From Phyllobates terribilis (lineage: Eukaryota): 64,000 bases of DNA. Below the pieces are notes generated by a model, which did no database searches, was not told where the DNA came from, and saw only the letters and a program-made list of their open reading frames with translations. The first letter of the stretch is position 1, and each line of letters opens with the position of its first letter. Location of the stretch: the NCBI RefSeq assembly GCF_046119375.1, contig NW_027362770.1:184512001-184576000 (forward strand), in the 5' to 3' direction. The position numbers and the translations under genes are program-made. Below, piece by piece: positions 6,186-62,458 of this stretch.

Positions 6186-6216
6186 CGGATGATATTACTC
6201 CTCTGTTTCTCCTTAC

Positions 6217-6474: not shown

Positions 6475-6490
6475 CTGGAAACAAGAGGCT

Positions 6491-9630: not shown

Positions 9631-9801
9631 CTGCTTTTCCCGTCTTTGCTTCTTCCACCTTTTCATCTTTCGGTCGCTGGATCAGGACGAGATGGAGATT
9701 TTATCTTTACTAATTGGAGGTCCGGACCCCCGAATACAACACAACGCCCACCTGCAGGCGTCAGATCAGGGAGACCAGGGACCGACTCCTGAGACCCTGA
9801 G

Positions 9802-12800
9802 CGGATTAGATACACGACTCAGCAGACAGTATCACACAGGAGAGGATTAGATACACGGCTCAGCAGTCAGTATCACACAGGAGAGGATTAGATACACGGC
9901 TCAGCAGACAGTATCACACAGGATAGGATTAGATACACAGCTCAGCAGAAAGTATCACACAGGAGAGGATTAGATACACAGCTCAGCAGTCAGTATCACA
10001 CAGGATAGGATTAGATACACGGCTCAGCAGACAGTATCACACAGGAGAGGATTAGATACACGGCTCAGCAGACAGTATCACACAGGAGAGGATTAGATAC
10101 ACAGCTCAGCAGTCAGTATCACACATGATGGAGTTAGATACACGGCTCAGCAGACAGTATCACACAGGATAGGATTAGATACACGGCTCAGAAGACAGTA
10201 TCACACAGGAGAGGATTAGATACATGGCTCAGCAGACGGTATCACACAGGAGAGGATTAGATATACAGCTCAGCAGACAGTATCACACAGGAGAGGATTA
10301 GATACACGGCTCAGCAGTCAGTATCACACAGGATAGGATTAGATACACGGCTCAGAAGACAGTATCACACAGGAGAGGATTAGATACATGGCTCAGCAGA
10401 CGGTATCACACAGGAGAGGATTAGATACACGGCTCAGAAGACAGTATCACACAGGATAGGATTAGATACACGACTCAGCTGACAGTATCACACAGGAGAG
10501 GATTAGATACATGGCTCAGCAGACGGTATCACACAGGAGAGGATTAGATACACGGCTCAGCAGACAGTATCACACAGGAGAGGATTAGATACACGGCTCA
10601 GCAGACGGTATCACACAGGAGAGGATTAGATACACAGCTCAGCAGACAGTATCACACAGGAGAGGATTAGATACACGGCTCAGCAGTCAGTATCACACAG
10701 GAGAGGATTAGATACACGGCTCAGAAGACAGTATCACACAGGAGAGGATTAGATACATGGCTCAGCAGACGGTATCACACAGGAGAGGATTAGATACACG
10801 GCTCAGAAGACAGTATCACACAGGATAGGATTAGATACACGGCTCAGAAGACAGTATCACACAGGAGAGGATTAGATACATGGCTCAGCAGACGGTATCA
10901 CACAGGAGAGGATTAGATACACGGCTCAGCAGACAGTATCACACAGGAGAGGATTAGATACACGGCTCAGCAGACGGTATCACACAGGAGAGGATTAGAT
11001 ACACAGCTCAGCAGACAGTATCACACAGGAGAGGATTAGATACACGGCTCAGCAGACGGTATCACACAGGAGAGGATTAGATACACAGCTCAGCAGACAG
11101 TATCACACAGGAGAGGATTAGATACACGGCTCAGCAGACAGTATCACACAGGAGAGGATTAGATACACGGCTCAGCAGACAGTATCACACAGGAGAGGAT
11201 TAGATACACAGCTCAGCAGACAGTATCACACAGGAGAGGATTAGATACACAGCTCAGCAGATGGTATCACACAGGATAGGATTAGATACACGGCTCAGCA
11301 GACAGTATCACACAGGAAAGGATTAGATACACGGCTCAGCAGACAGTATCACACAGGAGAGGATGAGAGACACGGCTCAGCAGACAGTATCACACAGGAG
11401 AGGATTAGATACACGGCTCAGCAGACAGTATCACACAGGAGAGGATTAGATACACGGCTCAGCAGACAGTATCACACAGGAGAGGATTAGATACACGGCT
11501 CAGCAGACAGTATCACACAGGAGAGGATTAGATACACGGCTCAGCAGACAGTATCACACAGGAGAGGATTAGATACACGGCTCAGCAGACAGTATCACAC
11601 AGGAGAGGATTAGATACACGGCTCAGCAGACAGTATCACACAGGAGAGGATTAGATACACAGCTCAGCAGACAGTATCACACAGGAGAGGATTAGATACA
11701 CAGCTCAGCAGACAGTATCACACAGGAGAGGATTAGATACACGGCTCAGCAGACAGTATCACACAGGAGAGGATTAGATACACGGCTCAGCAGTCAGTAT
11801 CACACAGGAGAGGATTAGATACACAGCTCAGCAGACAGTATCACACAGGAGAGGATTAGATACTCGGCTCAGCAGACAGTATCACACAGGAGAGGATTAG
11901 ATACACGGCTCAGCAGTCAGTATCACACAGGAGAGGATTAGATACACGGCTCAGCAGACAGTATCACACATGATGGAGTTAGATACACGGCTCAGAAGAC
12001 AGTATCACACAGGAGAGGATGAGAGACACGGCTCAGCAGACAGTATCACACAGGAGAGGATTAGATACACGGCTCAGCAGACAGTATCACACAGGAGAGG
12101 ATTAGATACACGGCTCAGCAGACGGTATCACACAGGAGAGGATTAGATACACAGCTCAGCAGACAGTATCACACAGGAGAGGATTAGATACACGGCTCAG
12201 CAGACGGTATCACACAGGAGAGGATTAGATACACAGCTCAGCAGACAGTATCACACAGGAGAGGATTAGATACACAGCTCAGCAGACAGTATCACACAGG
12301 AGAGGATTAGATACACGGCTCAGCAGACAGTATCACACAGGAGAGGATTAGATACACAGCTCAGCAGACAGTATCACACAGGAGAGGATTAGATACACAG
12401 CTCAGCAGACAGTGTCACACAGGAGAGGATTAGATACACGGCTCAGCAGACAGTATCATACAGGAGAGGATTAGATACACGGCTCAGCAGACGGTATCAC
12501 ACAGGAGAGGATTAGATACACGGCTCAGCAGACAGTGTCACACAGGAGAGGATTAGATACACGGCTCAGCAGACAGTATCACACAGGATAGGATTAGATA
12601 CACGGCTCAGCAGACAGTATCACACATGATGGAGTTAGATACACGGCTCAGCAGACAGTATCACACAGGAGAGGATTAGATACACAGCTCAGCAGAAAGT
12701 ATCACACAGGAGAGGGGATTAAATACACGGCTCAGCAGACAGTATCACACAGGAGAGGATTAGATACACGGCTCAGCAGACAGTATCACACAGGAAAGGA

Positions 12801-13523
12801 TTAGATACACGGCTCAGCAGACAGTATCACACAGGATAGGATTAGATACACGGCTCAGCAGACAGTATCACACAGGAGAGAACTAGATACACGGCTCAGC
12901 AGACAGTATCACACATGATGGAGTTAGATACACGGCTCAGAAGACAGTATCACACAGGAGAGGATTAGATACACAGCTCAGCAGAAAGTATCACACAGGA
13001 GAGAGGATTAGATACACGGCTCAGCAGACAGTATCACACAGGAGAGGATTAGATACACGGCTCAGCAGACAGTATCACACAGGAGAGGACTAGATACACG
13101 GCTCAGCAGACAGTATCACACATGATGGAGTTAGATACACGGCTCAGAAGACAGTATCACACAGGATAGGATTAGATACACAGCTCAGCAGAAAGTATCA
13201 CACAGGAGAGGATTAGATACACAGCTCAGCAGACAGTATCACACAGGAGAGGATTAGATACACGGCTCAGCAGACAGTATCACACAGGAGAGGATTAGAT
13301 ACACAGCTCAGCAGACAGTATCACACAGGAGAGGATTAGATACACAGCTCAGCAGACAGTATCACACAGGAGAGGATTAGATACAGGGCTCAGCAGACAG
13401 TATCACACAGGAGAGGATTAGATACACAGCTCAGCAGACAGTATCACACAGGAGAGGATTAGATACACAGCTCAGCAGACAGTATCACACAGGAGAGGAT
13501 TAGATACAGGGCTCAGCAGACAG
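9802..13523. repeat. 41-bp satellite (GATTAGATACACGGCTCAGCAGACAGTATCACACAGGAGAG)n, ~90 units
   Basis: Direct reading; period 41 (e.g. 11401 and 11442). Confidence 0.97.
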
Positions 13524-13861
13524 TTTCTGGTATATGGCTGTGATCCCGTGTGCTGAGGCTTAGATACAGCAGAGCGGTATTTTCCTCGGTGTGATCTTCT
13601 GCTTACGCTGCACTTTTCGGCAGCCGCCTGTGGTGACCTCTTCCCCTTGTGGTGTCGCCGCCCTGCTGTTCGCTGGTCCCATCTGCACATCTGAGGATCC
13701 AGATGCTTTGATAAGAGGTGGCCCTGCCGAGAGAAGCTCAGCCTCCGGGGCGGACGGGGACTACAACCCCGAAATGCCGTCACCCCCAACAGCTGCGGAG
13801 CCGCATTAACCCCCTCAGTACCAGGGGCTGCTCACAGATTTCTAATGAGCAAGCAATGGTA

Positions 13862-16800
13862 GCAGCTTTCCCAGTACAGAAGGGGGGCACCCAGCTTTCC
13901 CATGACAGGGGGGCTCCAAGCTTTCCCATTACACTGGGGCACCCAGCTTTCCCTTTACAGGGGGGCACCCAGCTTTCCCATTACAGGGGGGGCACCCAGC
14001 TTTCCCATTACAGAAGGGGGGCACCCAGCTTTCCCATTACAGAAGGGGGGCACCCAGCTTTCCCATGACAGGGGGGGCTCCAAGCTTTCCCATTACACTG
14101 GGGCAGCCAGCTTTCCCATTACAGGGGGGTCCAAGCTTTCCCATTAAACTGGGGCACCCAGCTTTCCCATTACAGGGGGGGGCTCCAAGCTTTCCCATTA
14201 CACTGGGGCACCCAGCTTTCCCATTACGGGGGGGTACCCAGATTTCCATCATAGGGGGGAGCACCCAGCTTTTCCATTACAGGTGAGGGGTACTCAGCTT
14301 TCCCATGACAGGGGGGGCTCCAAGCTTTCCCATTACACTGGGGCACCCAGCTTTCCCATTACAGGGGGGGGGCCTCCAAGCTTCCCCATTACAGAAGGGG
14401 GGCACCCAGCTTTCCCATTAAAGGTAGGGCTCCAAGCTTTCCCATTACACTGGGGCACCCAGCTTTCCCATTACAGGGGGGGGGGGAGGTCCAAGCTTTC
14501 CCATTACAGAAGGGGGGCACTCAGCTTTCCCATGACACTGGGGCACCCAGCTTTCCCTTTACGGGGGGGGGGGCACCCAGCTTTCCCATTACAGGGGGGG
14601 CACCCAGCTTTCCCATTACAGGGGGGGTCCAAGCTTTCCCATTACAGAAGGGGGGCACTCAGCTTTCCCATGACAGGGGGGGCTCCAAGCTTTCCCATTA
14701 CACTGGGGCACCCAGCTTTCCCTTTACAGGGGGGGGGCACCCAGCTTTCCCATTACAGGGGGGGCACCCAGCTTTCCCATTACAGGGGGGGTCCAAGCTT
14801 TCCCATTACATTGGGGCACCCAGCTTTCCCATTACAGGGGGGGGGCTCCAAGCTTTCCCATTACACTGGGGCACCCAGCTTTCCCATTACGGGGGGGGGG
14901 GGGGGGGCACCCAGCTTTCCCATTACAGGGGGGGGGGCCTCCAAGCTTTCCCATTACAGAAGGGGGGCACCCAGCTTTCCCATTAAAGGTAGGGCTCCAA
15001 CCTTTCCCATTACACTGGGGCACCCAGCTTTCCCATTACAGGGGTTGGAGGTCCAAGCTTTCCCATTGCAGAAGGGGGGCACTCAGCTTTCCCATGACAC
15101 TGGGGCACCCAGCTTTCCCTTTACGGGGGGGGCACCCAGCTTTCCCATTACAGGGGGGTCACCCAGCTTTCCCATTACAGGGGGGGGGGGTCCAAGCTTT
15201 CCCATTACAGAAGGGGGGCACTCAGCTTTCCCATGACAGGGGGGGCTCCAAGCTTTCCCATTACACTGGGGCACCCAGCTTTCCCTTTACAGGGGGGGAC
15301 ACCCAGCTTTCCCATTACACTGGGGCACCCAGCTTTCCCATTACAGGGGGGGGGGTTCCAAGCTTTCCCATTACACTGGGGCACCCAGCTTTCCCATTAC
15401 AGGGGGGGGTTCCAAGCTTTCCCACTACACTGGGGCACCCAGCTTTCCCTTTACAGGGGGGGGGTCCAAGCTTTCCCATTACACTGGGGCACCCAGCTTT
15501 CCCATTACATGGGGGGGGGTTCCAAGCTTTCCCATTACACTGGGGCACCCAGCTTTCCCATTACGGGGGGGGTACCCAGATTTCCATCATAGGGGGGATC
15601 ACCCAGCTTTTCCATTACAGGTGAGGGGTACTCAGCTTTCCCATGACAGGGGGGGCTCCAAGCTTTCCCATTACACTGGGGCACCCAGCTTTCCCTTTAC
15701 AGGGGGGGGGGGGCACCCAGCTTTCCCATTACAGGGGGGGGGGGGCACCCAGCTTTCCCATTACAGAAGGGGGGCACCCAGCTTTCCCATTAAAGGTAGG
15801 GCTCCAAGCTTTCCCATTACACTGGGGCACCAAGCTTTCCCATTACAGAAGGGGGGCACTCAGCTTTCCCATGACAGGGGGGGCTCCAAGCTTTCCCATT
15901 ACACTGGGGCACCCAGCTTTCCCTTTACAGGGGGGGGGGGTCCAAGCTTTCCCATTACAGAAGGGGGGCACTCAGCTTTCCCATGACAGGGGGGGCTCCA
16001 AGCTTTCCCATTACACTGGGGCACCCAGCTTTCCCTTTACAGGGGGGGGCACCCAGCTTTCCCATTACACTGGGGCACCCAGCTTTCCCATTACAGGGGG
16101 GGGGTTCCAAGCTTTCCCATTACACTGGGGCACCCAGCTTTCCCATTACAGGGGGGGGTTCCAAGCTTTCCCACTACACTGGGGCACCCAGCTTTTCCTT
16201 TACAGGGGGGGGGTCCAAGCTTTCCCATTACACTGGGGCACCCAGCTTTCCCATTACATGGGGGGGGGTTCCAAGCTTTCCCATTACACTGGGGCACCCA
16301 GCTTTCCCATTACGGGGGGGGTACCCAGATTTCCATCATAGGGGGGAGCACCCAGCTTTTCCATTACAGGTGAGGGGTACTCAGCTTTCCCATGACAGGG
16401 GGGGCTCCAAGCTTTCCCATTACACTGGGGCACCCAGCTTTCCCTTTACAGGGGGGGGGGGGGCACCCAGCTTTCCCATTACAGGGGGGGGGGGGCACCC
16501 AGCTTTCCCATTACAGAAGGGGGGCACCCAGCTTTCCCATTAAAGGTAGGGCTCCAAGCTTTCCCATTACACTGGGGCACCAAGGTTTCCCATTACAGAA
16601 GGGGGGCACTCAGCTTTCCCATGACAGGGGGGGCTCCAAGCTTTCCCATTACACTGGGGCACCCAGCTTTCCCTTTACAGGGGGGGGGCACCCAGCTTTC
16701 CCATTACAGGGGGGGCACCCGGCTTTCTCATTACAGGGGGGGGGGGTCCAAGCTTTCCCATTACACTGGGGCACCCAGCTTTCCCATTACAGGGGGGGGG

Positions 16801-17099
16801 TCCAAGTTTTCCCATTACACTGGGGCACCCAGCTTTCCCATTACGGGGGGGTACCCAGATTTCCATCATAGGGGGGAGCACCCAGCTTTTCCATTACAGA
16901 TGAGGGGCACCCAGCTTTCCCTTTACAGCGGGGGGGGCACCCAGCTTTCCCATTACAGGGGGGGGGGCACCCAGCTTTCCCATTACAGGAGGGGCTCCCA
17001 GCTTTTCCAATACAGGGTGGGGGGCTCCCAGCTTTTCCATTACAGGGTGGGGGGCTCCCAGCTTTTCCATTACAGGGTGGGGGGCTCCCAGCTTTCCCA
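13862..17099. repeat. ~27-bp minisatellite (CACCCAGCTTTCCCATTACA-Gn) with variable G-runs
   Basis: Direct reading; G-run length varies between units; marker CCCAGATTTCCATCATAGG recurs near 14238, 15576, 16324, 16856. Confidence 0.95.
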
Positions 17100-17609
17100 G
17101 GGTTCTGAATAGCAAACCACTATCACTGGTACCACTGGTTTGAAACCAGATGTCATTCAGGGGCCTTGGAAAGCTGTGTGTTCACCAGAAAGGGTGCAAC
17201 AGCGGCCATATTAGTTCATCATTAACCCCCTAATGACCGACATTTACTAGGATTTATTTGATAGAAGGAAATCCTCCTCCGTCTTCCCTCCGGCTCCGCA
17301 GCATGAAGAAAAGAATCTGGTGGGCGGCTGTTGATATATGCGTCTGCGCAGCGTGGTGTCGCCCCCTCACCCTGTCCTCGCCCCATCCTCCTGCAGGTTC
17401 GGGTTCAGGCAGCTGTGACCCGTCCTGTGTTCTATCAAAAAAAAAATCTTCATAGAACATCTGATCTGTTAACATTAAACCCGACAGAAGCCGCATGACC
17501 CGATGTGAACGCAGAAGAGAGCGGAGGTAACAAAGCATGGCGGAGGCGACAGGCCGGACTCTGGGGGCACAGAGCCAAAGTCTCCAGTTATCTTCCTACA
17601 GTCATCGCT

Positions 17610-20600
17610 AGTGAGAGCTCAGTACATACAGATTTCTACAGCCACCACTAGAGGGAGCTCACTACATACAGATTTATACAGTCACTACTAGAGGGAGCTC
17701 ACTACATACAGATTTATACAGCCACCACTAGAGGGAGCTCACTACATACAGATTTATACAGTCACCACTAGAGGGAGCTCACTACATACAGATTTATACA
17801 GTCACTACTAGAGGGAGCTCACTACATACAGATTTATACAGCCACCACTAGAGGGAGCTCACTACATACAGATTTATACAGCCACCACTAGAGGGAGCTC
17901 ACTACATGCAGATTTATACAGCCACCACTAGAGGGAGCTCACTACATACAGATTTATACAGCCACCACTAGAGGGAGCTCACTACATACAGATTTATAGA
18001 GTCACCACTAGAGGGAGCTCACTACATACAGATTTATACAGCCACCACTAGAGGGAGCTCACTACATACAGATTTATACAGCCACCACTAGGGGGAGCTC
18101 ACTACATACAGATTTATACAGCCACCACTAGAGGGAGCTCACTACATACAGATTTATACAGCCACCACTAGAGGGAGCTCACTACATACAGATTTATACA
18201 GCCACCACTAGAGGGAGCTCACTACATACAGATCTATACTGTAACCACTAGAGGGAGCTCACTACACACAGATTTATACAGCCACCACTAGAGGGAGCTC
18301 ACTACATACAGATTTATACAGTCACCACTAGAGGGAGCTCACTACATACAGATTTATACAGCCACCACTAGAGGGAGCTCACTACATACAAATTTATACA
18401 ACCACCACTAGAGGGAACTCACTACATACAGATTTATACAGTCACCACTAGAGGGAGCTCAGTACATACAGATTTATACAGTCACCACTAGAGGGAGCTC
18501 AGTACATACAGATTTATACAGCCACCACTAGAGGGAGCTCACTACATACAGATTTCTACAGCCACCAATAGAGGGAGCTCAGTACATACAGATTTATACA
18601 GCCCCCACTAGAGGGAGCTCACTACATACAGATTTCTACAACCCCTACTAGAGGGGGCTCACTACATACAGATTTATACAGCCACCACTAGAGGGAGCTC
18701 ACTACATACAGATTTATAGAGTTACCACTAGAGGGAGCTCACTACATACAGATTTATACAGCCACCACTAGGGGCAGCTCACTATATACAGATTTATACA
18801 GCCACCACTAGGGGGAGCTCACTACATACAGATTTATACAGCCACCACTAGAGGGAGCTCACTACATACAGATTTATACAACCACCACTAGGAGGAGCTC
18901 ACTACATACAGATTTATACAGCCAGCACTAGAGGGAGCTCACTACATACAGATTTATACAGCCACCACTAGAGGGAGCTCACTACATACAGATTTATAGA
19001 GTTACCACTAGAGGGAGCTCACTACATACAGATTTATACAGCCACCACTAGGGGGAGCTCACTACATACAGATTTATACAGCCACCACTAGGGGGAGCTC
19101 ACTACATACAGATTTATACAGCCACCACTAGAGGGAGCTCACTACATACAGATTTATACAGCCACCACTAGAGGGAGCTCACTACATACAGATTTATACA
19201 GCCACCACTAGAGGGAGCTCACTACATACAGATCTATACTGCAACCACTAGAGGGAGCTCACTACACACAGATTTATACAGCCACCACTAGAGGGAGCTC
19301 ACTACATACAGATTTATACAGTCACCACTAGAGGGAGCTCACTACATACAGATTTATACAGCCACCACTAGAGGGAGCTCACTACATACAGATCTATACT
19401 GCAACCACTAGAGGGAGCTCACTACACACAGATTTATACAGCCACCACTAGAGGGAGCTCACTACATACAGATTTATACAGTCACCACTAGAGGGAGCTC
19501 ACTACATACAGATTTATACAGCCACCACTAGAGGGAGCTCACTACATACAGATTTATACAGCCACCACTAGAGGGAGCTCACTACATACAGATTTATACA
19601 GTCACCACTAGAGGGAGCTCACTACATACAGATTATACAGTCACCACTAGAGGGAGCTCACTACATACAGATTTATACAGTCACTACTAGAGGGAGCTCA
19701 CTACATACAGATTTATACAGCCACCACTAGAGGGAGCTCACTACATACAGATTTATACAGCCACCTCTAGAGGGAGCTCACTACATACAGATTTATACAG
19801 CCACCACTAGAGGGAGCTCACTACATACAGATTTATACAGCCACCACTAGAGGGAGCTCACTACATACAGATTTATACAGCCACCACTAGAGGGAGCTCA
19901 CTACATACAGATCTATACTGTAACCACTAGAGGGAGCTCACTACACACAGATTTATACAGCCACCACTAGAGGGAGCTCACTACATACAGATTTATACAG
20001 TCACCACTAGAGGGAGCTCACTACATACAGATTTATACAGCCACCACTAGAGGGAGCTCACTACATACAAATTTATACAACCACCACTAGAGGGAACTCA
20101 CTACATACAGATTTATACAGTCACCACTAGAGGGAGCTCAGTACATACAGATTTATACAGTCACCACTAGAGGGAGCTCAGTACATACAGATTTATACAG
20201 CCACCACTAGAGGGAGCTCACTACATACAGATTTCTACAGCCACCAATAGAGGGAGCTCAGTACATACAGATTTATACAGCCCCCACTAGAGGGAGCTCA
20301 CTACATACAGATTTCTACAACCCCTACTAGAGGGGGCTCACTACATACAGATTTATACAGCCACCACTAGAGGGAGCTCACTACATACAGATTTATAGAG
20401 TTACCACTAGAGGGAGCTCACTACATACAGATTTATACAGCCACCACTAGGGGCAGCTCACTATATACAGATTTATACAGCCACCACTAGGGGGAGCTCA
20501 CTACATACAGATTTATACAGCCACCACTAGAGGGAGCTCACTACATACAGATTTATACAACCACCACTAGGAGGAGCTCACTACATACAGATTTATACAG

Positions 20601-23600
20601 CCAGCACTAGAGGGAGCTCACTACATACAGATTTATACAGCCACCACTAGAGGGAGCTCACTACATACAGATTTATAGAGTTACCACTAGAGGGAGCTCA
20701 CTACATACAGATTTATACAGCCACCACTAGGGGGAGCTCACTACATACAGATTTATACAGCCACCACTAGGGGGAGCTCACTACATACAGATTTATACAG
20801 CCACCACTAGAGGGAGCTCACTACATACAGATTTATACAGCCACCACTAGAGGGAGCTCACTACATACAGATTTATACAGCCACCACTAGAGGGAGCTCA
20901 CTACATACAGATCTATACTGCAACCACTAGAGGGAGCTCACTACACACAGATTTATACAGCCACCACTAGAGGGAGCTCACTACATACAGATTTATACAG
21001 TCACCACTAGAGGGAGCTCACTACATACAGATTTATACAGCCACCACTAGAGGGAGCTCACTACATACAGATCTATACTGCAACCACTAGAGGGAGCTCA
21101 CTACACACAGATTTATACAGCCACCACTAGAGGGAGCTCACTACATACAGATTTATACAGTCACCACTAGAGGGAGCTCACTACATACAGATTTATACAG
21201 CCACCACTAGAGGGAGCTCACTACATACAGATTTATACAGCCACCACTAGAGGGAGCTCACTACATACAGATTTATACAGTCACCACTAGAGGGAGCTCA
21301 CTACATACAGATTATACAGTCACCACTAGAGGGAGCTCACTACATACAGATTTATACAGTCACTACTAGAGGGAGCTCACTACATACAGATTTATACAGC
21401 CACCACTAGAGGGAGCTCACTACATACAGATTTATACAGCCACCTCTAGAGGGAGCTCACTACATACAGATTTATACAGCCACCACTAGAGGGAGCTCAC
21501 TACATACAGATTTATACAGCCACCACTAGAGGGAGCTCACTACATACAGATTTATAGAGTCACCACTAGAGGGAGCTCACTACATACAGATTTATACAGC
21601 CACCACTAGAGGGAGCTCACTACATACAGATTTATACAGCCACCACTAGGGGGAGCTCACTACATACAGATTTATACAGCCACCACTAGAGGGAGCTCAC
21701 TACATACAGATTTATACAGCCACCACTAGAGGGAGCTCACTACATACAGATTTATACAGCCACCACTAGAGGGAGCTCACTACATACAGATCTATACTGT
21801 AACCACTAGAGGGAGCTCACTACACACAGATTTATACAGCCACCACTAGAGGGAGCTCACTACATACAGATTTATACAGTCACCACTAGAGGGAGCTCAC
21901 TACATACAGATTTATACAGCCACCACTAGAGGGAGCTCACTACATACAAATTTATACAACCACCACTAGAGGGAACTCACTACATACAGATTTATACAGT
22001 CACCACTAGAGGGAGCTCAGTACATACAGATTTATACAGTCACCACTAGAGGGAGCTCAGTACATACAGATTTATACAGCCACCACTAGAGGGAGCTCAC
22101 TACATACAGATTTCTACAGCCACCAATAGAGGGAGCTCAGTACATACAGATTTATACAGCCCCCACTAGAGGGAGCTCACTACATACAGATTTCTACAAC
22201 CCCTACTAGAGGGAGCTCACTACATACAGATTTATACAGCCACCACTAGAGGGAGCTCACTACATACAGATTTATAGAGTTACCACTAGAGGGAGCTCAC
22301 TACATACAGATTTATACAGCCACCACTAGGGGGAGCTCACTACATACAGATTTATACAGCCACCACTAGGGGGAGCTCACTACATACAGATTTATACAGC
22401 CACCACTAGAGGGAGCTCACTACATACAGATTTATACAGCCACCACTAGAGGGAGCTCACTACATACAGATTTATACAGCCACCACTAGAGGGAGCTCAC
22501 TACATACAGATCTATACTGCAACCACTAGAGGGAGCTCACTACACACAGATTTATACAGCCACCACTAGAGGGAGCTCACTACATACAGATTTATACAGT
22601 CACCACTAGAGGGAGCTCACTACATACAGATTTATACAGCCACCACTAGAGGGAGCTCACTACATACAGATTTATACAGCCACCACTAGAGGGAGCTCAC
22701 TACATACAGATTTATACAGTCACCACTAGAGGGAGCTCACTACATACAGATTATACAGTCACCACTAGAGGGAGCTCACTACATACAGATTTATACAGTC
22801 ACTACTAGAGGGAGCTCACTACATACAGATTTATACAGCCACCACTAGAGGGAGCTCACTACATACAGATTTATACAGCCACCACTAGAGGGAGCTCACT
22901 ACATACAGATTTATACAGCCACCACTAGAGGGAGCTCACTACATACAGATTTATACAGCCACCACTAGAGGGAGCTCACTACATACAGATTTATAGAGTC
23001 ACCACTAGAGGAGCTCACTACATACAGATTTATACAGCCACCACTAGAGGGAGCTCACTACATACAGATTTATACAGCCACCACTAGGGGGAGCTCACTA
23101 CATACAGATTTATACAGCCACCACTAGAGGGAGCTCACTACATACAGATTTATACAGCCACCACTAGAGGGAGCTCACTACATACAGATTTATACAGCCA
23201 CCACTAGAGGGAGCTCACTACATACAGATCTATACTGCAACCACTAGAGGGAGCTCACTACACACAGATTTATACAGCCACCACTAGAGGGAGCTCACTA
23301 CATACAGATTTATACAGTCACCACTAGAGGGAGCTCACTACATACAGATTTATACAGCCACCACTAGAGGGAGCTCACTACATACAAATTTATACAACCA
23401 CCACTAGAGGGAACTCACTACATACATATTTATACAGCCACCACTAGAGGGAGCTTACTACATACAGATTTCTACAGCCACCACTAGAGGGAGCTCACTA
23501 CATACAGATTTCTACAGCCACCACTAGAAGGAGCTCACTACATACAGATTTCTACAGCCACCAATAGAGGGAGCTCAGTACATACAGATTTATACAGCCC

Positions 23601-23807
23601 CCACTAGAGGGAGCTCACTACATACAGATTTCTACAACCCCTACTAGAGGGAGCTCAGTACATACAGATTTCTACAGCCACCACTAGAGGGAGCTCACTA
23701 CATACAGATTTATACAGTCACCACTAGAGGGAGCTCACTACATACAGATTTATACAGCCACCACTAGAGGGAGCTCAGTACATACAGATTTCTACAGTCA
23801 CCACTAG
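17610..23807 (+). repeat. 40-bp satellite (CCACTAGAGGGAGCTCACTACATACAGATTTATACAGCCA)n, left block, ~155 units
   Basis: Direct reading. Confidence 0.97.
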
Positions 23808-32214: not shown

Positions 32215-34405
32215 GAGCTCACTGCATCCAGATTTATACAGCCACCACTAGAGGGAGCTCAGTACATACAGATTTATACAGCCACCACTAGAGGGAGCTC
32301 AGTACATACAGATTTATACAGCCAGCACTAGAGGGAGCTCACTACATACAGATTTATACAGCCACCACTAGAGGGAGCTCAGTACATACAGATTTATACA
32401 ATCACCACTAGAGGGAGCTCACTACATACAGATTTATACAGCCACCACTAGAGGGAGCTCAGTACATACAGATTTATACAGCCAGCACTAGAGGGAGCTC
32501 ACTACATACAGATTTATACAGCCACCACTAGAGGGAGCTCAGTACATACAGATTTATACAGCCAGCACTAGAGGGAGCTCACTGCATACAGATTTATACA
32601 GCCACCACTAGGGGGAGCTCACTGCATACAGATTTATACAGCCACCACTAGAGGGAGCTCACTGCATACAGATTTATACAGCCACCACTAGAGGGAGCTC
32701 ACTGCATACAGATTTATACAGCCACCACTAGAGGGAGCTCACTGCATACAGATTTATACAGCCACCACTAGAGGGAGCTCACTGCATACAGATTTATATA
32801 CAGCCATCACTAGGAGGAGCTCACTACATACAGATTTATATACAGCCATCACTAGGAGGAGCTCACTACATACAGATTTATACAGCCACCACTAGAGGGA
32901 GCTCACTACATACAGATTTATACAGCCACCACTAGGGGGAGCTCACTGCCTACAGATTTATACAGCCAGCACTAGGGGGAGCTCACTGCCTACAGATTTA
33001 TACAGCCAGCACTAGGGGGAGCTCACTGCCTACAGATTTATACAGCCACCACTAGAGGGAGCTCACTGCCTACAGATTTATACAGCCACCACTAGAGGGA
33101 GCTCACTGCCTACAGATTTATACAGCCACCACTAGAGGGAGCTCACTGCCTACAGATTTATACAGCCACCACTAGAGGGAGCTCACTGCCTACAGATTTA
33201 TACAGCCACCACTAGAGGGAGCTCACTGCCTACAGATTTATACAGCCACCACTAGAGGGAGCTCACTGCCTACAGATTTATACAGCCACCACTAGAGGGA
33301 GCTCACTGCCTACAGATTTATACAGCCACCACTAGAGGGAGCTCACTGCCTACAGATTTATACAGCCACCACTAGAGGGAGCTCACTGCCTACAGATTTA
33401 TACAGCCACCACTAGAGGGAGCTCACTGCCTACAGATTTATACAGCCACCACTAGAGGGAGCTCACTGCCTACAGATTTATACAGCCACCACTAGAGGGA
33501 GCTCACTACATACAGATTTATACAGCCCCCACTAGAGGGAGCTCAGTACATACAGATTTCTACAGCCCCCACTAGAGGGAGCTCACTACATACAGATTTA
33601 TACAGCCACCACTAGAGGGAGCTCACTACATACAGATTTATACAGCCACTACTAGAGGGAGCTCACTACATACAGATTTATACAACCACCACTAGGAGGA
33701 GCTCACTACATACAGATTTATACAGCCACCACTAGAGGGAGCTCACTACATACAGATTTATATACAGCCACCACTAGAGGGAGCTCACTGCATACAGATT
33801 TATACAGCCACCACTAGAGGGAGCTCACTACATACAGATTTATACAGCCACCACTAGAGGGAGCTCACTACATACAGATTTATACAGCCACCACTAGAGG
33901 GAGCTCACTACATACAGATTTATACAGCCACCACTAGAGGGAGCTCACTACATACAGATTTATACAGCCACCACTAGAGGGAGCTCACTACATACAGATT
34001 TATACAGCCACCACTAGAGGGAGCTCACTACATACAGATTTCTACAGCCACCACTAGAGGGAGCTCACTACATACAGATTTCTACAGCCACCACTAGAGG
34101 GAGCTCACTACATACAGATTTATACAGCCACTACTAGAGGGAGCTCAGTACATACAGATTTATACAGTCACCAGTAGGGGGAGCTCACTACATATAGATT
34201 TATACAGCCACCACTAGAGGGAGCTCACTACATACAGATTTATATACAGCCATCACTAGGAGGAGCTCACTACATACAGATTTATACAGCCCCCACTAGA
34301 GGGAGCTCACTACATATAGATTTATACAGCCACCACTAGAGGGACCTCACTACATACAGATTTATACAACCACCACTAGGAGGAGCTCACTACATACAGA
34401 TTTAT
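32215..34405 (+). repeat. 40-bp satellite, right block (~55 units), same orientation as the left block
   Basis: Resumes at GAGCTC directly after the retrotransposon 3' end. Confidence 0.97.
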
Positions 34406-34528
34406 AGTCATTACATTTTCTCTCCTGCCAGAATCTCTGCACCATGTTCAGTGCTTGTGTGCAGGGTGGACATAGTATATATTACATAGATTCATACAGT
34501 TCTCATTTACTTCTATCATAAATATAAA

Positions 34529-35296
34529 TGTAGTGAGCTCCACCTAGTGGTGGCAGTATAAATCTGTATGTAGTGAGCTCCCTCTAGTGGTGGCAGTATA
34601 AATCTGTATGTACTGAGCTCCCTCTAGTGGTGACTGTATAAATCTGTATGTAGTGAGCTCCCTCTAGTGGTGGCAGTATAAATCTGTATGTAGTGAGCTC
34701 CCTCTAGTGGTGGCTGTATTAATCTGTATGTAGTGAGCTCCCTCTAGTAGTGACTGTATAAATCTGTATGTAGTGAGCTCCCTCTAGTGGTGGTTGTATA
34801 AATCTGTATGTAGTGAGCTCCCTCTAGTGATGTGTATAAATCTGTATGTAGTGAGCTCCTTCTAGTGGTGGCTGTATAAATCTGTATGCAGTGAGCTCCC
34901 TCTACTGGTGGCTGTACAAATCTGTATGTAGTGAGCTCCCTCTAGTGATGTGTATAAATCTGTATGTAGTGAGCTCCCCCTAGTGGTGACTGTATAAATC
35001 TGTATGCAGTGAGCTCCCTCTACTGGTGGCTGTACAAATCTGTATGTAGTGAGCTCCCCCTAGTGGTGGCTGTATAAATCTGTATGCAGTGAGCTCCCCC
35101 TAGTGGTGGCTGTATAAATCTGTATGCAGTGAGCTCCCCCTAGTGGTGGCTGTATAAATCTGTATGAAGTGAGCTCCCCCTAGTGGTGGCTGTATAAATC
35201 TGTATGTAGTGAGCTCCCTCTAATGGTGGCTGTATAAATCTGTATGTAGTGAGCTCCCTCTAGTGGTGGCTGTATAAATCTGGATGTACTGAGCTC
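34529..35296 (-). repeat. 40-bp satellite, inverted block (~19 units)
   Basis: Reverse-complement units GTGAGCTCCCTCTAGTGGTGGCTGTATAAATCTGTATGTA. Confidence 0.96.
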
Positions 35297-38628: not shown

Positions 38629-58705
<20,077 letters not shown>

Positions 58706-59081
58706 GCCAAGGGGCCGCGGGGTCACACAGACGCTCGGGGGGGGGGGCGCTGAAAGCTGCCGGGTCTGAGCCCTGGGATTAACCCCTCATCGCCGGGCAG
58801 GAGAAACCTGGGGGGGGGGGGGGGGTCTCACCAACAATAATCTGTGACACCCAACGTCAATGTCGCCCCCACATTAACCTCCTGCCACCCGGAAACAACA
58901 AGCTGCTAATCTGACAACCATGAATAGCAGCGACAGCTAGAACACCCAGGTCCCCCACAGTCTGCGCTGACAGCCAGGTTACATCTAGTGAGACCCCTGA
59001 ATACAACAAAGCATCAACCCCGACAACCAGGAGACCAATAACACCGACAACCAGACAGAAAAAGGTCACTAATGCTCCATC

Positions 59082-59360
59082 CCGACAACCAGCAGAGATC
59101 TCACCAGGGACCCCCAACAACCTGCAGAGATCTCACAAGAGACCCCCGACAACCAGCAGAGATCTCACAAGAGACCCCCGACAACCAGCAGAGATCTCAC
59201 AAGAGACCCCCGACAACCAGCAGAGATCTCACAAGAGACCCCCGACAACCAGCAGAGATCTCACAAGAGACCCCCGGACTCCTGACAACCTGCAGAGATC
59301 TCACAAGAGACCCCCGACTCCTGACAACCAGCAGAGATCTCACAAGAGACCCCCGACAAC
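59082..59360. repeat. 32-bp minisatellite (~8 units) upstream of the KDM5A ATG
   Basis: CGACAACCAGCAGAGATCTCACAAGAGACCCC. Confidence 0.92.
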
Positions 59361-59379
59361 CAGGGGGAAAATGACTGAA

Positions 59380-59770
59380 TAACAGGTGACAGGCAGGCCT
59401 CTCCAGGCTCCTGGGGCCCCTCCTGCTCCGGTGCCGCCGTGCGGATCCCCCGGGCCCGGTCCAGTCCGTCCTCGCCTCCCCGGAGCTCCGGGAGTGATGG
59501 CGGCGGTCACAGCAGCCTCCGCAGCCCCCGGCCCGGTCACTACGTCTCCGGCTGCAAACACCGGTTTGTTTTGCTCTCAGTCCTAGGCCGGAAGTTCGGG
59601 GTCACCGGAAACCGGAACTGTCCGCCTCCGCCAGCCGGGGGCAGGTAGTGCGCGGCTGCTGTGATGGCGGCTGAGCCCGGAGATGAGATTCCTGCAGAAT
59701 TCAGAAGGCACCGGAGACGGTTTTCACATGGCGATAATGATGCTTCACCGGACGGAGGGATCTGCTGTGT
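59380..59770. promoter_or_regulatory. CpG island, probable KDM5A promoter
   Basis: Very high GC/CpG; ETS-type CCGGAAGT at 59588 and tandem CCGGAA at ~59605-59617; ~700 nt upstream of the KDM5A ATG. Confidence 0.5.
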
Positions 59771-59777
59771 AGACGGT

Positions 59778-61148
59778 GGTATCACTCCGCGTCATCCTGC
59801 ACTGTAGTACCAGATGTCACCAGCAGAGGGCGGACGGTATCTGTGTCATCCTCCGCTGCAATACTAGGCGTGACCAGCAGAGGGCGGCTGTATCCCTCCG
59901 CGTCATTCTAAACTGCAATCTCAGATGTGACCAGCAGAGGGCAGGCGGTATCACTCCGCGTCACCCTAAACTGCAATCTCAGATGTGACCAGCAGAGGGC
60001 AGGCGGTATCACTCCGCGTCACCCTAAACTGCAATCTCAGATGTGACCAGCAAAGGGTGGACAGTATCACTTCGCGTCATCATAAGCTGCAGTACCAGAT
60101 GTAACCAGCAGAGGGCGGTATCATTTCATGTCATCCTACACTGCAATATAAGATGCTACCAGCAGAGGGCGGCGATATCACTGCGATGCAGTACCAGATG
60201 TAACCAGCAGAGGGCAGGCAGTAACACGTCGCATCATCCTTAAGCTGCAGTACCAGATGTGACCAGCAGAGGGCGGACGGTATCAATCGGTGTCATCCTG
60301 CACTGCAATACTAGATGTGACCAGTAGTATCATTCCGCGTCATCCTGCACTGCAAGTACTAAATGTGACCAACAGAGGGCGGTAGTATCACAGCGTCATC
60401 CTGCGCTGTAGTACTAGATGTAACCAGCAGAGGGCGGGCAGTATCAGTGTCATCCTGCGCTGCAGTACTAGATAGCATCAGCAGAGGGCAATAAAATTCC
60501 GTATCATCCAACACTGCAATATAAGATGTTACCAGCAGAGGGCGAGCGGTATCACTCAGTGTTATCCTGCGCTGTAGTACCAGATAATACCAGAAGAGGG
60601 CGGTATCACTCCGTGTCATCCTACTCTGTAGTACCAGATGTGACCAGCAGAGGACGGACGGTATCAATCAGTGTCATTCTGCGCTGCAATACTAGATGTG
60701 ACCAGCAGAGGGCAGTAGTATCACTCCGCGTCATCCTGTACTGCAGTACTAGATGTGACCAACAGAGGGCGGTAGTATCACTTAGCGTCATCCTGCGCTG
60801 TAGTACCAGATGTAACCAGCAGAGGGCGGGCAGTATCCGTGTCATCCTGCGCTGCAGTACTAGATAGCATTTGCAGAGGGCAATGAAATTCCGTATCATC
60901 TAACACTGCAATATAAGATGTTACCAGCAGAGGGCGAGCGGTATCACTGTTATCCTGCGCTGCAGTACCAGATAATACCAGAAGAGGGCAGTATCACTCC
61001 GTGACATCCTACACTGCAATACCAAATGTGACCAGCAGAAGGCATCATGCGCCGCAGTATTATATTTGACCAGCAGAGGGCGGCCGGATCACTCCAGGTC
61101 ATCCTGCGCTGCAGTACCACATTTGACCAGCAGAGGGCGGGCGGTATC
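59778..61148 (+). repeat. ~57-bp degenerate tandem repeat (~24 units), each carrying a CTCF-like site
   Basis: Consensus CTGCAGTACCAGATGTGACCAGCAGAGGGCGG...TATCACTCCGCGTCATCCTGCA; 15 units have a perfect CCAGCAGAGGGC. Confidence 0.9.
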
Positions 61149-61199
61149 ATTCCGCGCCTTACCCTGCATAGCAATACGGTGTACAAATCCTAAGAACCA

Positions 61200-61448
61200 T
61201 AAAACTACATTTCCCGGTGAGCTCCGCGCTCGCGTAAACAATGACCCTGCTACTGATTGGCTGGTGAATGAAGCGGCTCTGCGATTAGCTGAGACTTGGC
61301 CAGCGGCTTGTTCGGTTTTCAGTTTGCGCTGTAGAGCTGAGGCGGCTGCAGACCCGCGGAGAGCGGCCGGAGAGGAGGACGTGTGGCTGCCGGTGCTTAT
61401 AGCGGGGCCATACGGGGGCGACACAGGCCGCTGAGGCCGTCTATGCAG
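61200..61448 (+). promoter_or_regulatory. Probable CCDC77 promoter and non-coding first exon
   Basis: CpG-rich; E2F-like TTTCCCGG 61210, forkhead-like GTAAACAA 61234, inverted CCAAT (ATTGG) 61256; donor CAG|GTACAG at 61448. Confidence 0.4.
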
Positions 61449-62118
61449 GTACAGCTGTGACCGGTGACTATGGGGGCGCTGTGTGCGGTCAGCCCGGGGG
61501 GCGCAGGCTTCACAGCTGATGTTCAGTCTGCTGAGCCCCTATTTGCTGTGCAGTGTCCCCTCCCCCACCATAAAATAAGAATTATTACATTAGTATAGGA
61601 GAAGAGAGCAGACCTGGTTCTGAGCAGATGGCGGCTGCGGCTTCTCCTCCCGGTGACGGTGATATTTTCTGTAATGCTTTTATTTCCAGCGTCTCCTCTG
61701 CGGCATTGACCTCTTTGTCACCACTTTGGGAAACATAAAAAAAAAAGTTTTGTTCACTTTTATTTATTTTTTTTTGAGGATTTGCAGCAATTAAATAAGC
61801 TGAGATGCTTTTTTCTTATCATTTTTGGTAGTTTAAAAAGTTTTTCTATTTTATTTTTATATATTTTTTTTTCTACTTTTCTTTCTTTCCCTTTTCTTCC
61901 CCCGTGTGACCTCTCATATACTTGTAGTTTAGTAATTGATCGCGGCCTCCTAGTCCTGCGTCTCGGCTACAAAGATGGCGGAGACAGAGGCCCCCGGCCA
62001 CCAGAACAGTCCGTCCGGAAGCGCTTTCTCTTCCCGGGGAGGGAAGAGGTTAATTAAATACCCCTCGAACCCTAAACCTGTTGTGATTTTTATTTCAGGT
62101 TTTGTCCTTTTTGCAAAC

Positions 62119-62156
62119 ATGGCGCTGTCACCGCCCCGAGACCGCCGAGACCACAG
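62119..62156 (+). CDS. CCDC77: CCDC77 first coding exon (38 nt CDS; exon from 62099)
   Basis: tttcag| at 62098, ATG 62119 (MALSPPRDRRDH), CAG|GTGAGG donor; 2-nt overhang fits the next exon. Confidence 0.7.
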
Positions 62157-62238
62157 GTGAGGGGGCGCCGCAGGTCACAGTGTGATGTGACGGCTCCACA
62201 GATCCCGGCTCGGGTCTCATGTTTTTTCTCCTTCTCAG

Positions 62239-62458
62239 GCCCAGGATCCCCCACACTCCAGACTCACCCGTCTCCTACAGCTTCACCCCACAGCCGGTGG
62301 ACTCCACCCCACTGCCCCCCATTAACGAGCGCCTGGCTTACCTGCGCCCGTCCCGCGAGCTGCTGGAGTATTACCGCAGGAAGATCGCGGAGTTTGACGA
62401 GGAGCATGAAGATCTGGTGTCGAGGCTGGAGCAGTACAAAGCCACATATGAGGAGCAG
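62239..62458 (+). CDS. CCDC77: CCDC77 coding exon 2 (220 nt); gene continues beyond the window
   Basis: STPLPPINERLAYLRPSRELLEYYRRKIAEFDEEHEDLVSRLEQYKATYEEQ resembles the recalled CCDC77 [32 protein letters not shown]; ttctcag| and |gtgatg; KDM5A-CCDC77 synteny. Confidence 0.88.

What the first reader, a model, noticed from the sequence alone, without database searches (positions are those of the whole stretch)
59778..61148. Tandem array of ~24 full-length CTCF-like sites (core plus upstream motif) between two divergent promoters
Seen in sequence: ~57-bp units reading TGCAGTACC-AGATG-TGACCAGCAGAGGGCGG, all in one orientation, 15 with a perfect CCAGCAGAGGGC. Established: the CTCF core consensus is CCASYAGRKGGCRS, and a subset of sites carry an upstream TGCAG-type motif about 5-6 bp before the core, read by zinc fingers 9-11. 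The units match both modules at that spacing. Core and upstream motif look better preserved than the linker between units. Inference: a repeat-built CTCF cluster forming an insulator or loop anchor that splits the KDM5A/CCDC77 head-to-head promoter in two.
Basis: partly seen in the sequence, partly recalled or inferred. Interest (0 to 1): 0.75.

Follow-up and report, generated by a model that had tools for sequence, protein, structure and literature searches.

The report
CTCF-motif minisatellite splitting KDM5A/CCDC77 promoter
A 1.4-kb tandem repeat lies exactly between the start sites of the frog genes KDM5A and CCDC77, and almost every one of its 25 short units carries a strong, same-direction docking motif for the genome-folding protein CTCF. 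It is therefore a plausible but untested repeat-built chromatin boundary, of a kind already known from mammals.

Summary
The array is real. It has 25 units of about 54-58 bp at 59775-61138. There are 24 CTCF-core-like sites, all on the + strand, and 15 are a perfect CCAGCAGAGGGC (0.06 expected by chance). Twenty-one sites score at least 15.9 bits on the CTCF matrix, against 0.03 in shuffles.

The consensus unit is a textbook two-part CTCF site. CTGCAGTACC sits in the same register (-18 to -9) as the ZF9-11 contacts in the CTCF-DNA crystal structure.

The 12-bp core is the best-kept part of the unit: 0.73 versus 1.62 parsimony changes per non-CpG column (p about 0.01). Variation concentrates at degenerate matrix positions.

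RNA contigs and splice joints place the KDM5A start near 59.6 kb (minus strand) and CCDC77 exon 1 at 61350-61445 (plus strand). The array therefore separates two promoter halves.

The array is specific to this locus and varies in length between individuals.

CTCF occupancy, methylation and insulation could not be tested. I file it as a new member of a known kind (tandem-repeat CTCF clusters).

The scan has already noted similar CTCF-motif minisatellites elsewhere in this genome (TERF2, NOL7, cd19/rabep2 and others). That recurrence is the more interesting lead.

The parts
59775..61138 (+). Minisatellite of 25 units (38-59 bp, mostly 54 or 57-58 bp). It holds 24 CTCF cores, starting at 59820, 59874, 59931, 59989, 60047, 60105, 60159, 60204, 60263, 60369, 60424, 60478, 60532, 60590, 60644, 60702, 60759, 60816, 60870, 60924, 60978, 61032, 61070 and 61127.
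   Evidence: Mean pairwise unit identity is 70%.
61139..61180 (+). Decayed terminal partial unit (GGCGGTATCATTCCGCGCCTTACCCTGCATAGCAATACGGTG) without a core.
   Evidence: Read directly against the consensus.
60275..60655 (+). First copy of a 7-unit higher-order repeat.
   Evidence: Aligned to 60656-61043: 355 identities, 21 mismatches, 17 gap positions. Lag-7 unit identity is 0.90-0.96.
60656..61043 (+). Second copy of the 7-unit higher-order repeat.
59886..60058 (+). Three near-identical units (90-97% identity). A one-unit (58 bp) deletion allele, 59907->59966, is seen in other individuals.
   Evidence: The joint is in runs X5 (DNA) and X9.
60313..60324 (+). Truncated core (GTGACCAG|TAG) in the reference. 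Run X9 carries 10 extra bases (CAGCAGAGGG) after 60321, which makes a complete core.
   Evidence: table 4.
58559..59619 (-). KDM5A exon 1. The coding part is about 58559-58705 ([23 protein letters not shown]...). A roughly 0.9-kb 5'UTR runs up to a start-site zone near 59577-59619.
   Evidence: ORF. Solved-structure match to KDM5A residues 10-63, 89.7 bits against about 73 for KDM5B. RNA contigs at 58730-59118, 59252-59619 and 59425-59577. Contigs cannot give the exact start.
59589..59621 (.). ETS-like cluster (CCGGAAGT, CCGGAAAC, CCGGAACT) at the inferred KDM5A start site. It lies about 155-200 bp from the left edge of the array.
   Evidence: Read. The motif assignment is from general knowledge.
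61207..61265 (.). CCDC77 proximal promoter motifs: ACTACATTTCCCGG (like a ZNF143 site) and the CCAAT box CTGATTGGCTGG.
   Evidence: Read. The motif assignment is from general knowledge and was not tested.
61350..61445 (+). CCDC77 exon 1 (non-coding). The RNA contig begins at 61350, so the start site is at or upstream of that position.
   Evidence: Run X17 record 14 and the splice joint 61445->62096 (GT..AG) in X9 and X17.
62096..62153 (+). CCDC77 exon 2, with a likely start codon at 62119 (MALSPPRDRRD...).
   Evidence: Joints 61445->62096 and 62153->62236. ORF frame. The start codon is inferred.
62236..62458 (+). CCDC77 exon 3 (…PLPPINERLAYLRPSRELLEYYRRKIAEFDEEHEDLV…).
   Evidence: for the joints and the loose end after 62458. 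The top protein-atlas hit is 'Coiled-coil domain containing 77 family protein', score 0.94 with 171 shared features.

Best explanation
This is a locus-specific, length-polymorphic minisatellite. It most likely grew by tandem duplication (slippage or unequal crossing-over) of one genuine two-part CTCF site that lay in the middle of the ancestral KDM5A/CCDC77 bidirectional promoter. Shown: it now offers 24 (25 in another allele) co-oriented CTCF sites at 54-58-bp spacing, and it pushes the two core promoters about 1.75 kb apart, each keeping roughly 150-200 bp of proximal promoter. Inferred: several units are occupied by CTCF at once. Gaps of 35-39 bp between cores match the '2xCTS' class that gives double footprints in mammals. 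Binding should not be blocked by CpG methylation, because the methylation-sensitive core position C2 is a CpA here and only the insensitive C12 is a CpG. All motifs point towards CCDC77, so the cohesin-stalling N-terminal side of CTCF faces higher window coordinates. The array would then act as a very reliable one-sided loop anchor and barrier for cohesin arriving from the CCDC77 side. It would shield the KDM5A promoter from elements on that side and uncouple the two promoters.
For: Array, orientation and motif strength. The two-part register matches the crystal contacts: C(-9) and C(-10) pair with the guanines read by ZF9, then A(-11) and T(-12), then C(-15) and G(-16) for ZF11 (unit; structure text). 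CTGCAGTACC differs at one position from the 'CTGCAGTTCC-like' upstream consensus with its usual 5-bp linker. About 13-15% of real CTCF sites carry this module, whereas a match with at most 1 mismatch at a fixed offset has a chance of about 1e-4 (my calculation). The founder unit was therefore very probably a true CTCF site. Constraint on the core: it is the best-conserved 12-column window, with 15 perfect units against at most 10 for any other window. It shows 0.73 against 1.62 parsimony changes per non-CpG column, p = 0.012. Per-position conservation follows the matrix's information content (Spearman 0.63, p = 0.004). Variant types occupy 15 of 21 possibilities at degenerate positions but only 9 of 36 at positions 4-15, and the observed types are milder than random sets (P = 0.001). 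This holds although units are only 70% alike overall. Position between active promoters. Locus-specific: DNA contig depth in the array is 1-3 times the flanks. There are no flanking inverted repeats. CpG observed/expected is 0.65 in the array, against 0.2-0.35 in bulk sequence and 0.82-0.85 in the flanking promoter halves. Methylation logic. Co-occupancy at this spacing. The two-part motif is ancestral to vertebrates, and convergent CTCF motifs mark domain borders in Xenopus.
Against: There are no occupancy, accessibility, methylation or contact data for this species. The constraint signal rests on 11 against 16 columns and on a tree built from those same columns. The variable positions 16-19 coincide with the indel-prone unit junction. 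The upstream module, which the literature links to insulator strength, decays as fast as the linker, and its ZF9 contact bases are the most variable. A core-destroying 10-bp deletion and a one-unit deletion segregate in the population, so single sites are dispensable. CpG sites in the unit have decayed about twice as fast as other sites, which suggests at least some germline methylation. Low-level RNA contigs cross parts of the array.
Confidence: 0.55

Rival explanations
1. Neutral by-product. The window lies in a minisatellite-rich, probably highly recombining region. A promoter CTCF site happened to be inside a segment that expanded. The array may or may not bind CTCF, but it has no selected boundary function. 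The better-kept core reflects chance, mutation-rate heterogeneity or the position of indel-prone junctions.
For: There are twelve unrelated minisatellites in 64 kb. In frogs, satellite expansion tracks recombination and is ascribed to unequal crossing-over, and the arrays are rich in AGGG, TGGG and ACAG. Such composition raises the chance of a CTCF-like unit about fivefold (8e-4, against about 1.8e-4 for random sequence derived). The array is length-polymorphic and one core is deleted in the reference. The upstream module is not conserved.
Against: The core is the single best-kept window in units that are otherwise 30% diverged. Variation avoids informative matrix positions. Even the composition-matched null makes two CTCF-bearing array families out of 12 very unlikely, about 4e-5.
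Confidence: 0.3
2. Not a CTCF platform in vivo. The array is packed in methylated or repressed chromatin, or is read by another factor (for example one binding the CGTCA half-site or the CAGATG E-box in the unit), and the CTCF likeness is functionally idle.
For: Excess CpG decay in the unit. Some RNA contigs cross the array. Other well-kept blocks exist in the linker, GGTATCA and GTCATCC, at about 8% mismatch.
Against: The array sits inside a CpG-rich island between two expressed promoters. The core lacks a CpG at the methylation-sensitive position. No other block is kept as well as the core. The two-part register is specific to CTCF's finger array.
Confidence: 0.12
3. Assembly artefact: a collapsed or expanded repeat that does not exist as written.
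For: Repeats are error-prone in assemblies, and contigs of short-read runs break inside the array.
Against: Run X5 is a different sample and study. It covers all 30 bins and differs only by one unit and a few bases. X9 and X10 carry matching pieces.
Confidence: 0.02

Closest known systems
DXZ4, FIRRE and ICCE tandem-repeat CTCF anchors of the mammalian X chromosome
   Same: They are tandem repeats with a CTCF motif in every unit. What stays conserved is the repeat organisation and the short CTCF motif rather than the rest of the unit. The orientation of the motif array governs contacts at Dxz4 (abstract listed). Mouse Dxz4 keeps Ctcf binding despite sequence turnover.
   Different: Those are macrosatellites with kb-sized units spanning tens to hundreds of kb. 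They are bound on the inactive X only and are methylation-controlled. This array has 57-bp units, spans 1.4 kb, has no known link to a sex chromosome or X inactivation, sits inside a promoter, and has a core that should be insensitive to CpG methylation.
Clustered CTCF sites ('2xCTS') at active promoters (Pugacheva et al. 2015, PMC4562119)
   Same: Two or more CTCF motifs separated by 30-40-bp linkers give double footprints and higher occupancy, and are enriched at active promoters. Every neighbouring pair here has a 35-39-bp linker and lies between two active promoters.
   Different: The mammalian cases have two or three sites that are not repeat-derived, and many are co-bound with BORIS/CTCFL. 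Here there are 24 sites produced by a minisatellite. To my knowledge (not checked) frogs have no BORIS.
Human VNTRs carrying many predicted two-core CTCF motifs (HRNR repeat; Lu et al. 2023, PMC10234305)
   Same: The number of predicted 34-bp two-part CTCF motifs scales with VNTR length and is proposed to change local folding and the expression of nearby genes. That case too rests on prediction.
   Different: That repeat is coding (an exon of HRNR) with long units. This array is non-coding and promoter-central.
Transposon-borne CTCF site expansions (SINE B2 and others) and clustered boundary sites
   Same: They show lineage-specific multiplication of CTCF sites by repeats and clustering of sites at boundaries.
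   Different: That multiplication is by transposition to many loci. Here it is by local tandem duplication at one locus.

Membership tests
Two-part vertebrate CTCF binding site (core plus upstream module) | Core matching CCASYAGRKGGCRS / MA0139.1 | tested here: met
   21 of 24 sites score at least 15.9 bits out of a maximum of 25.6. Shuffles give 0.03 hits.
Two-part vertebrate CTCF binding site (core plus upstream module) | Upstream CTGCAGTNCC-like module about 8 bp before core position C1 (a 5-bp linker before the TGG-like triplet) | tested here: met
   The consensus unit matches, in the register of the crystal contacts at -9 to -18. Per unit, 4 are perfect, 13 of 24 have at most 1 mismatch and 11 of 24 have 2-5 mismatches.
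Two-part vertebrate CTCF binding site (core plus upstream module) | Occupied by CTCF in cells | not testable with these tools
   No ChIP, CUT&Tag or ATAC run was found among the 23 runs listed.
Tandem-repeat CTCF anchor (DXZ4/FIRRE/ICCE kind) | Tandem units that each carry a co-oriented CTCF motif | tested here: met
   24 of 25 units, all on the + strand.
Tandem-repeat CTCF anchor (DXZ4/FIRRE/ICCE kind) | Motif conserved more than the rest of the unit | tested here: met
   Met for the core only. The upstream module is not conserved.
Tandem-repeat CTCF anchor (DXZ4/FIRRE/ICCE kind) | Macrosatellite scale (kb units, array of tens of kb or more) | tested here: not met
   The units are 54-58 bp and the array is 1.37 kb.
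Tandem-repeat CTCF anchor (DXZ4/FIRRE/ICCE kind) | Anchors long-range contacts | not testable with these tools
   No Hi-C data were reachable.
Clustered CTCF sites at promoters (2xCTS) | Two or more motifs with 30-40-bp linkers at an active promoter | tested here: met
   Core-to-core spacing is mostly 54-58 bp, which gives 35-39-bp linkers. Both flanking genes are expressed.
Enhancer-blocking insulator | Blocks enhancer-promoter communication when placed between them | not testable with these tools
   This needs a reporter assay or a deletion.
Bidirectional promoter (divergent start sites less than 1 kb apart) | Start sites within 1 kb | tested here: not met
   The start sites lie near 59.6 kb and at or before 61.35 kb, about 1.75 kb apart, and 1.37 kb of that is the array. 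Contigs give only approximate starts.
Transposable-element internal repeat | Terminal repeats around the array, or many genomic copies | tested here: not met
   No flanking inverted repeats. DNA depth is 1-3 times the flanks.

The most novel reading that the evidence does not exclude
In this frog genome, functional CTCF sites, often promoter-proximal, are recurrently amplified in place into co-oriented minisatellite arrays whose cores are kept by selection. This would be a tandem-duplication route to CTCF-site expansion, the counterpart of SINE-borne expansion in mammals, and it would build exceptionally stable one-sided boundaries in a very large genome. The KDM5A/CCDC77 array would be one instance that has converted a bidirectional promoter into two insulated promoters.
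Probability: 0.2. Interest if true: 0.75.

Novelty: new member of a known kind. Interest (0 to 1): 0.5.

Why it matters
If the array is bound, it is a natural 24-site, single-orientation CTCF cassette. It sits at a defined, expressed and conserved gene pair, and its copy number varies in the population. That offers a ready-made allelic series for three questions: how boundary strength scales with the number of sites, whether neighbouring CTCF molecules co-occupy sites at about 57-bp spacing, and what happens when a bidirectional promoter is split. The wider point is that unrelated CTCF-motif minisatellites seem over-represented in this genome. That could reveal either a mutational link between CTCF sites and tandem duplication or selection for repeat-built boundaries in giant amphibian genomes. 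If the array is unbound, it is an ordinary promoter VNTR.

Tried and rejected
1. The JASPAR upstream-module matrices (MA1929/MA1930) were not available and I could not recall them. I used the text consensus CTGCAGTNCC and the crystal-contact register instead.
2. I looked for occupancy data. The single run search returned only DNA runs and transcriptome-like runs.
3. Orthologous intervals in other frogs could not be compared, because no eukaryotic genome collection is searchable here. Organism B (run X17) gave only RNA contigs of the exons.
4. A genome-wide copy count could only be approximated from contig depth in X5.
5. A transposable-element origin is rejected.
6. Coding potential of the array is rejected. 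The ORFs through it are only repeat read-through.
7. Pfam gave nothing for the CCDC77 exon, so its identity rests on the protein-atlas hit, on synteny with KDM5A, and on my memory of the human protein.
8. One Pfam call failed on a frame error.
9. A literature search for frog or amphibian CTCF-bearing satellites found no report.

Full report
**The observation**

Reading 59400-61600 and running Tandem Repeats Finder shows a head-to-tail array from 59778 to 61153 with a period of 54-57 bp. I anchored units on the core and obtained 24 core-like sites. Cutting between cores gives 25 units that tile 59775-61138 with nothing left over. One 106-bp stretch is two units, the first of which has lost its core. 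A decayed partial unit without a core follows, to about 61180.

The exact 12-mer CCAGCAGAGGGC occurs 15 times in the 64-kb window. All 15 are in the array and on the + strand, against 0.06 expected from shuffles. With it, 22 sites score at least 10 bits and 21 score 15.9-22.4 bits, out of a possible 25.6. The best minus-strand score in the array is 0.6 bits. Five hundred dinucleotide-preserving shuffles of the array give on average 0.03 hits at 14 bits or more, against 21 observed.

**The two-part motif**

The consensus unit is GGCGGTATCACTCCGTGTCATCCTGCGCTGCAGTACCAGATGTGACCAGCAGAGGGC. Counting back from C1 of the core CCAGCAG, the upstream decamer CTGCAGTACC occupies positions -18 to -9.

The ZF3-ZF11/DNA crystal structure paper (PMC10484683) describes these contacts:
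- ZF8 bridges about 7-8 bp.
- ZF9 reads -9 to -12: guanines opposite -9 and -10, then A(-11) and T(-12).
- ZF11 contacts G(-15) and G(-16) across the two strands.

The unit has C(-9), C(-10), A(-11), T(-12), C(-15) and G(-16), which is the same register. PMC12885311 gives the upstream consensus as 'CTGCAGTTCC-like', usually with a 5-bp linker before a TGG-like triplet and the core, and says 13-15% of sites carry it. Here the sequence is CTGCAGTACC-AGATG-TGA-core.

A match with at most one mismatch at a fixed offset has a chance of about 1e-4 (my arithmetic). The founder unit was therefore very probably a real two-part CTCF site and not a look-alike. The two-part mode is ancestral to vertebrates (lamprey ChIP-seq, PMC5504073). 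Convergent CTCF motifs mark domain borders in Xenopus tropicalis (PMC8270788).

Unit by unit the module is weaker. Four units are perfect, nine have one mismatch, six have two, four have three, and one has five because of a 1-bp insertion.

**Motif versus linker conservation**

Units are only 70% identical on average. The exceptions are a 7-unit higher-order duplication (60275-60655 against 60656-61043: 355 identities, 21 mismatches) and three near-identical units at 59886-60058.

Against this background the core 12-mer is the best-kept 12-column window of the unit. Fifteen units are perfect there, against at most 10 for any other window and 0-6 for windows that do not overlap the core. I built a tree of the units and counted Fitch parsimony changes per column, with CpG columns set aside:

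| Region | Changes per column |
|---|---|
| Core | 0.73 |
| Linker | 1.62 |
| Upstream module | 1.60 |
| 5-bp spacer | 1.60 |

The core-versus-linker difference gives p = 0.012 in a one-sided column permutation. So the core is conserved and the upstream module is not.

Across the 19 matrix positions, conservation in the array tracks the matrix's information content (Spearman 0.63, p = 0.004). Observed variant types fill 15 of 21 possibilities at the degenerate positions 1-3 and 16-19. They fill only 9 of 36 at positions 4-15, each in one or two units. The observed types cost less binding score than random sets (P = 0.001).

This pattern is what purifying selection on CTCF binding would give, with two caveats. 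The columns are few, and positions 16-19 coincide with the indel-prone unit junction. CpG columns change about twice as fast as the others (3.5-4.0 against 1.6).

**What lies around the array**

On the minus strand, an ORF at 58499-58726 reads [49 protein letters not shown]. Its best solved-structure match is KDM5A residues 10-63 (E = 9e-25, 89.7 bits, against about 73 for KDM5B). Exons 2 and 3 lie near 52.7 and 52.5 kb.

The one run search returned four kinds of run:
- DNA runs from the probable source sample.
- DNA runs from a second study.
- Several small runs that hold 30-44% of the words.
- Runs from a second organism label (organism B).

Laying X9, X10, X5 and X17 showed GT..AG joints at 61445->62096 and 62153->62236, and a continuation beyond 62458. 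X9, X10 and X17 are therefore transcriptomes, and they define CCDC77 exons at 61350-61445, 62096-62153 and 62236-62458. The exon 3 translation's top protein-atlas hit is a 'Coiled-coil domain containing 77' cluster (score 0.94, 171 shared features). Pfam has no model for it. I searched exons singly by reference and built no joined model.

The KDM5A RNA contigs run from the coding exon up to 59577 (X17) and 59619 (X9). This puts the start-site zone near 59.6 kb, beside a CCGGAAGT cluster. The array thus fills 1.37 kb of the roughly 1.75 kb between two divergent, expressed start sites. Each start site keeps about 150-200 bp of proximal promoter. CpG observed/expected is 0.65 in the array, 0.82-0.85 in the two promoter halves, and 0.2-0.35 in bulk sequence.

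Array coverage in RNA is nil (X17) or low (X9, depth about 4 against 23-80 on exons). The exception is one X10 contig that runs from the 5'UTR to 59986. That contig remains unexplained.

**Nature and dynamics of the repeat**

Run X5 is DNA from another sample and study. It covers every bin, so the array is not an assembly artefact. Its contig depth in the array is 1-3 times that of the flanks, as the internal duplication predicts. The repeat is therefore locus-specific and not a dispersed high-copy family. No inverted repeats flank it.

It is a true VNTR:
- X5 and X9 lack one 58-bp unit (59907->59966).
- X9 has 10 extra bases after 60321 that make the truncated core complete.
- A low-depth X10 contig suggests a two-unit gain.

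Loss of single sites is evidently tolerated.

**How it most likely works**

Shown: the array is a co-oriented set of 24-25 high-scoring CTCF sites between two active promoters, and the core is preferentially preserved.

Inferred: the array binds several CTCF molecules at once.
- The 35-39-bp gaps between cores match the mammalian '2xCTS' class, which gives double footprints and higher occupancy and is enriched at active promoters (PMC4562119).
- CTCF binding is sensitive to methylation at core position C2 and insensitive at C12 (PMC10484683). Here C2 is followed by A, and the only core CpG is C12-G13. CpG methylation of the core should therefore not evict CTCF.
- All motifs point to higher coordinates, so the N-terminal, cohesin-stalling side would face CCDC77.
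- Insulation is reported to be stronger when that side faces the enhancer, and to rise with the number of sites.

The prediction is a highly reliable one-sided anchor and barrier for loops on the CCDC77 side, together with physical and regulatory uncoupling of the two promoters. I put 0.55 on this. I put 0.30 on a neutral promoter VNTR that merely inherited a CTCF site, 0.12 on an unbound or otherwise-read array, and 0.02 on an artefact.

**Comparison with what is known**

Tandem repeats that carry a CTCF motif in each unit are established in mammals:
- DXZ4, FIRRE and ICCE. In these, the motif and the repeat organisation are conserved rather than the remaining sequence (PMC6125249; PMC3491370).
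- The human HRNR VNTR, which has been predicted to add two-core CTCF motifs with length (PMC10234305).
- Clustered boundary sites and transposon-borne expansions.

This array works like those but differs in scale (57-bp units, 1.4 kb) and in place (the centre of a conserved head-to-head promoter). It also differs in lacking a methylation switch in the core. I file it as a new member of a known kind. It fails the macrosatellite criterion, and with about 1.75 kb between start sites the gene pair no longer meets the usual 1-kb definition of a bidirectional promoter.

**The wider pattern**

Two of the 12 unrelated minisatellite families in this window carry strong CTCF matches in nearly every unit. 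They are this array and the 40-bp satellite at 17.6-35.3 kb, which has about 220 hits with a median of 17.7 bits.

A third-order Markov null trained on the other ten arrays gives 8e-4 per family for a match of 16 bits or more. That is about five times the random-sequence rate, and fits the AGGG/ACAG richness of frog subtelomeric repeats (PMC10794172). It is still far too low to explain two families (about 4e-5).

The scan's notebook lists 19 notes on CTCF-like arrays in 773 windows of this genome. Several are at promoters: TERF2/CYB5B, NOL7, cd19/rabep2, endou/cyb5r3 and wee2/ssbp1. Those notes are unchecked leads, and one of them names the species as the golden poison frog, which I did not verify. 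So the scan has found this kind before on other DNA of the same genome. The recurrence deserves a proper census. My literature searches found no report of it in amphibians.

**Limits**

- No upstream-module matrix was available.
- Contigs give neither exact start sites nor strand.
- No occupancy, methylation, contact or cross-species data could be reached.

Noticed in passing
window 59081-59363: A 32-bp minisatellite (8.4 copies, unit CCCGACAACCAGCAGAGATCTCACAAGAGACC) lies inside the transcribed KDM5A 5'UTR. It shares the 10-mer ACCAGCAGAG with the 57-bp unit but lacks the GGGC half of the core (best matrix score 4.4 bits). Its contigs are very deep in RNA runs. It may be a decayed relative of the array, or the shared 10-mer may be coincidence.
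   Followed up: partly
window 17597-23807, 32215-34406 (+) and 34528-35296 (-): A 40-bp satellite (TACAGCCACCACTAGAGGGAGCTC...) in a KDM5A intron gives about 220 CTCF-matrix hits with a median of 17.7 bits. They are co-oriented, except for an inverted block at the right end.
   Followed up: partly
window 43596 (+), 48581 (-), 48900 (-): Three isolated strong CTCF-matrix hits (14.6, 18.7 and 21.1 bits) lie outside any repeat. The two minus-strand sites and the plus-strand array form a divergent pair around KDM5A exons 1-3.
   Followed up: no
window 1-17099, 40817-41015, 45511-46026, 50487-51117, 51665-51763: Ten further unrelated minisatellites (units of 19-56 bp, some more than 6 kb long) fill the KDM5A introns. 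This density resembles the recombination-driven 'extended subtelomere' described for frogs.
   Followed up: no
window 56877-57928 (-): Remnants of a Tc1/mariner transposase (Pfam HTH_Tnp_Tc3_2, E = 6e-12) lie in KDM5A intron 1.
   Followed up: partly
window 59334-59986; 59766-60577; 60988-61199: Low-depth RNA-run contigs cross the inferred KDM5A start site into the array (X10) or lie within it (X9). None does so in X17. The possibilities are an upstream alternative start, promoter-upstream transcripts, or genomic DNA carry-over.
   Followed up: no
window 61207-61265 and 59496-59671: Promoter motifs flank the array. On the CCDC77 side there is ACTACATTTCCCGG (like a ZNF143 site) and a CCAAT box. 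On the KDM5A side there are three GGAA ETS-like sites and two GATGGCGGC (YY1-like) elements, which form an 18-nt inverted repeat (59500-59517 and 59654-59671).
   Followed up: no
window 61628-61879: A stretch inside CCDC77 intron 1 has high depth in RNA run X9 (37-54) but low depth in X10 (about 2) and none in X17. The read tool skipped a repeat at 61845-61876. It is probably a dispersed repeat or a retained or alternative exon.
   Followed up: no
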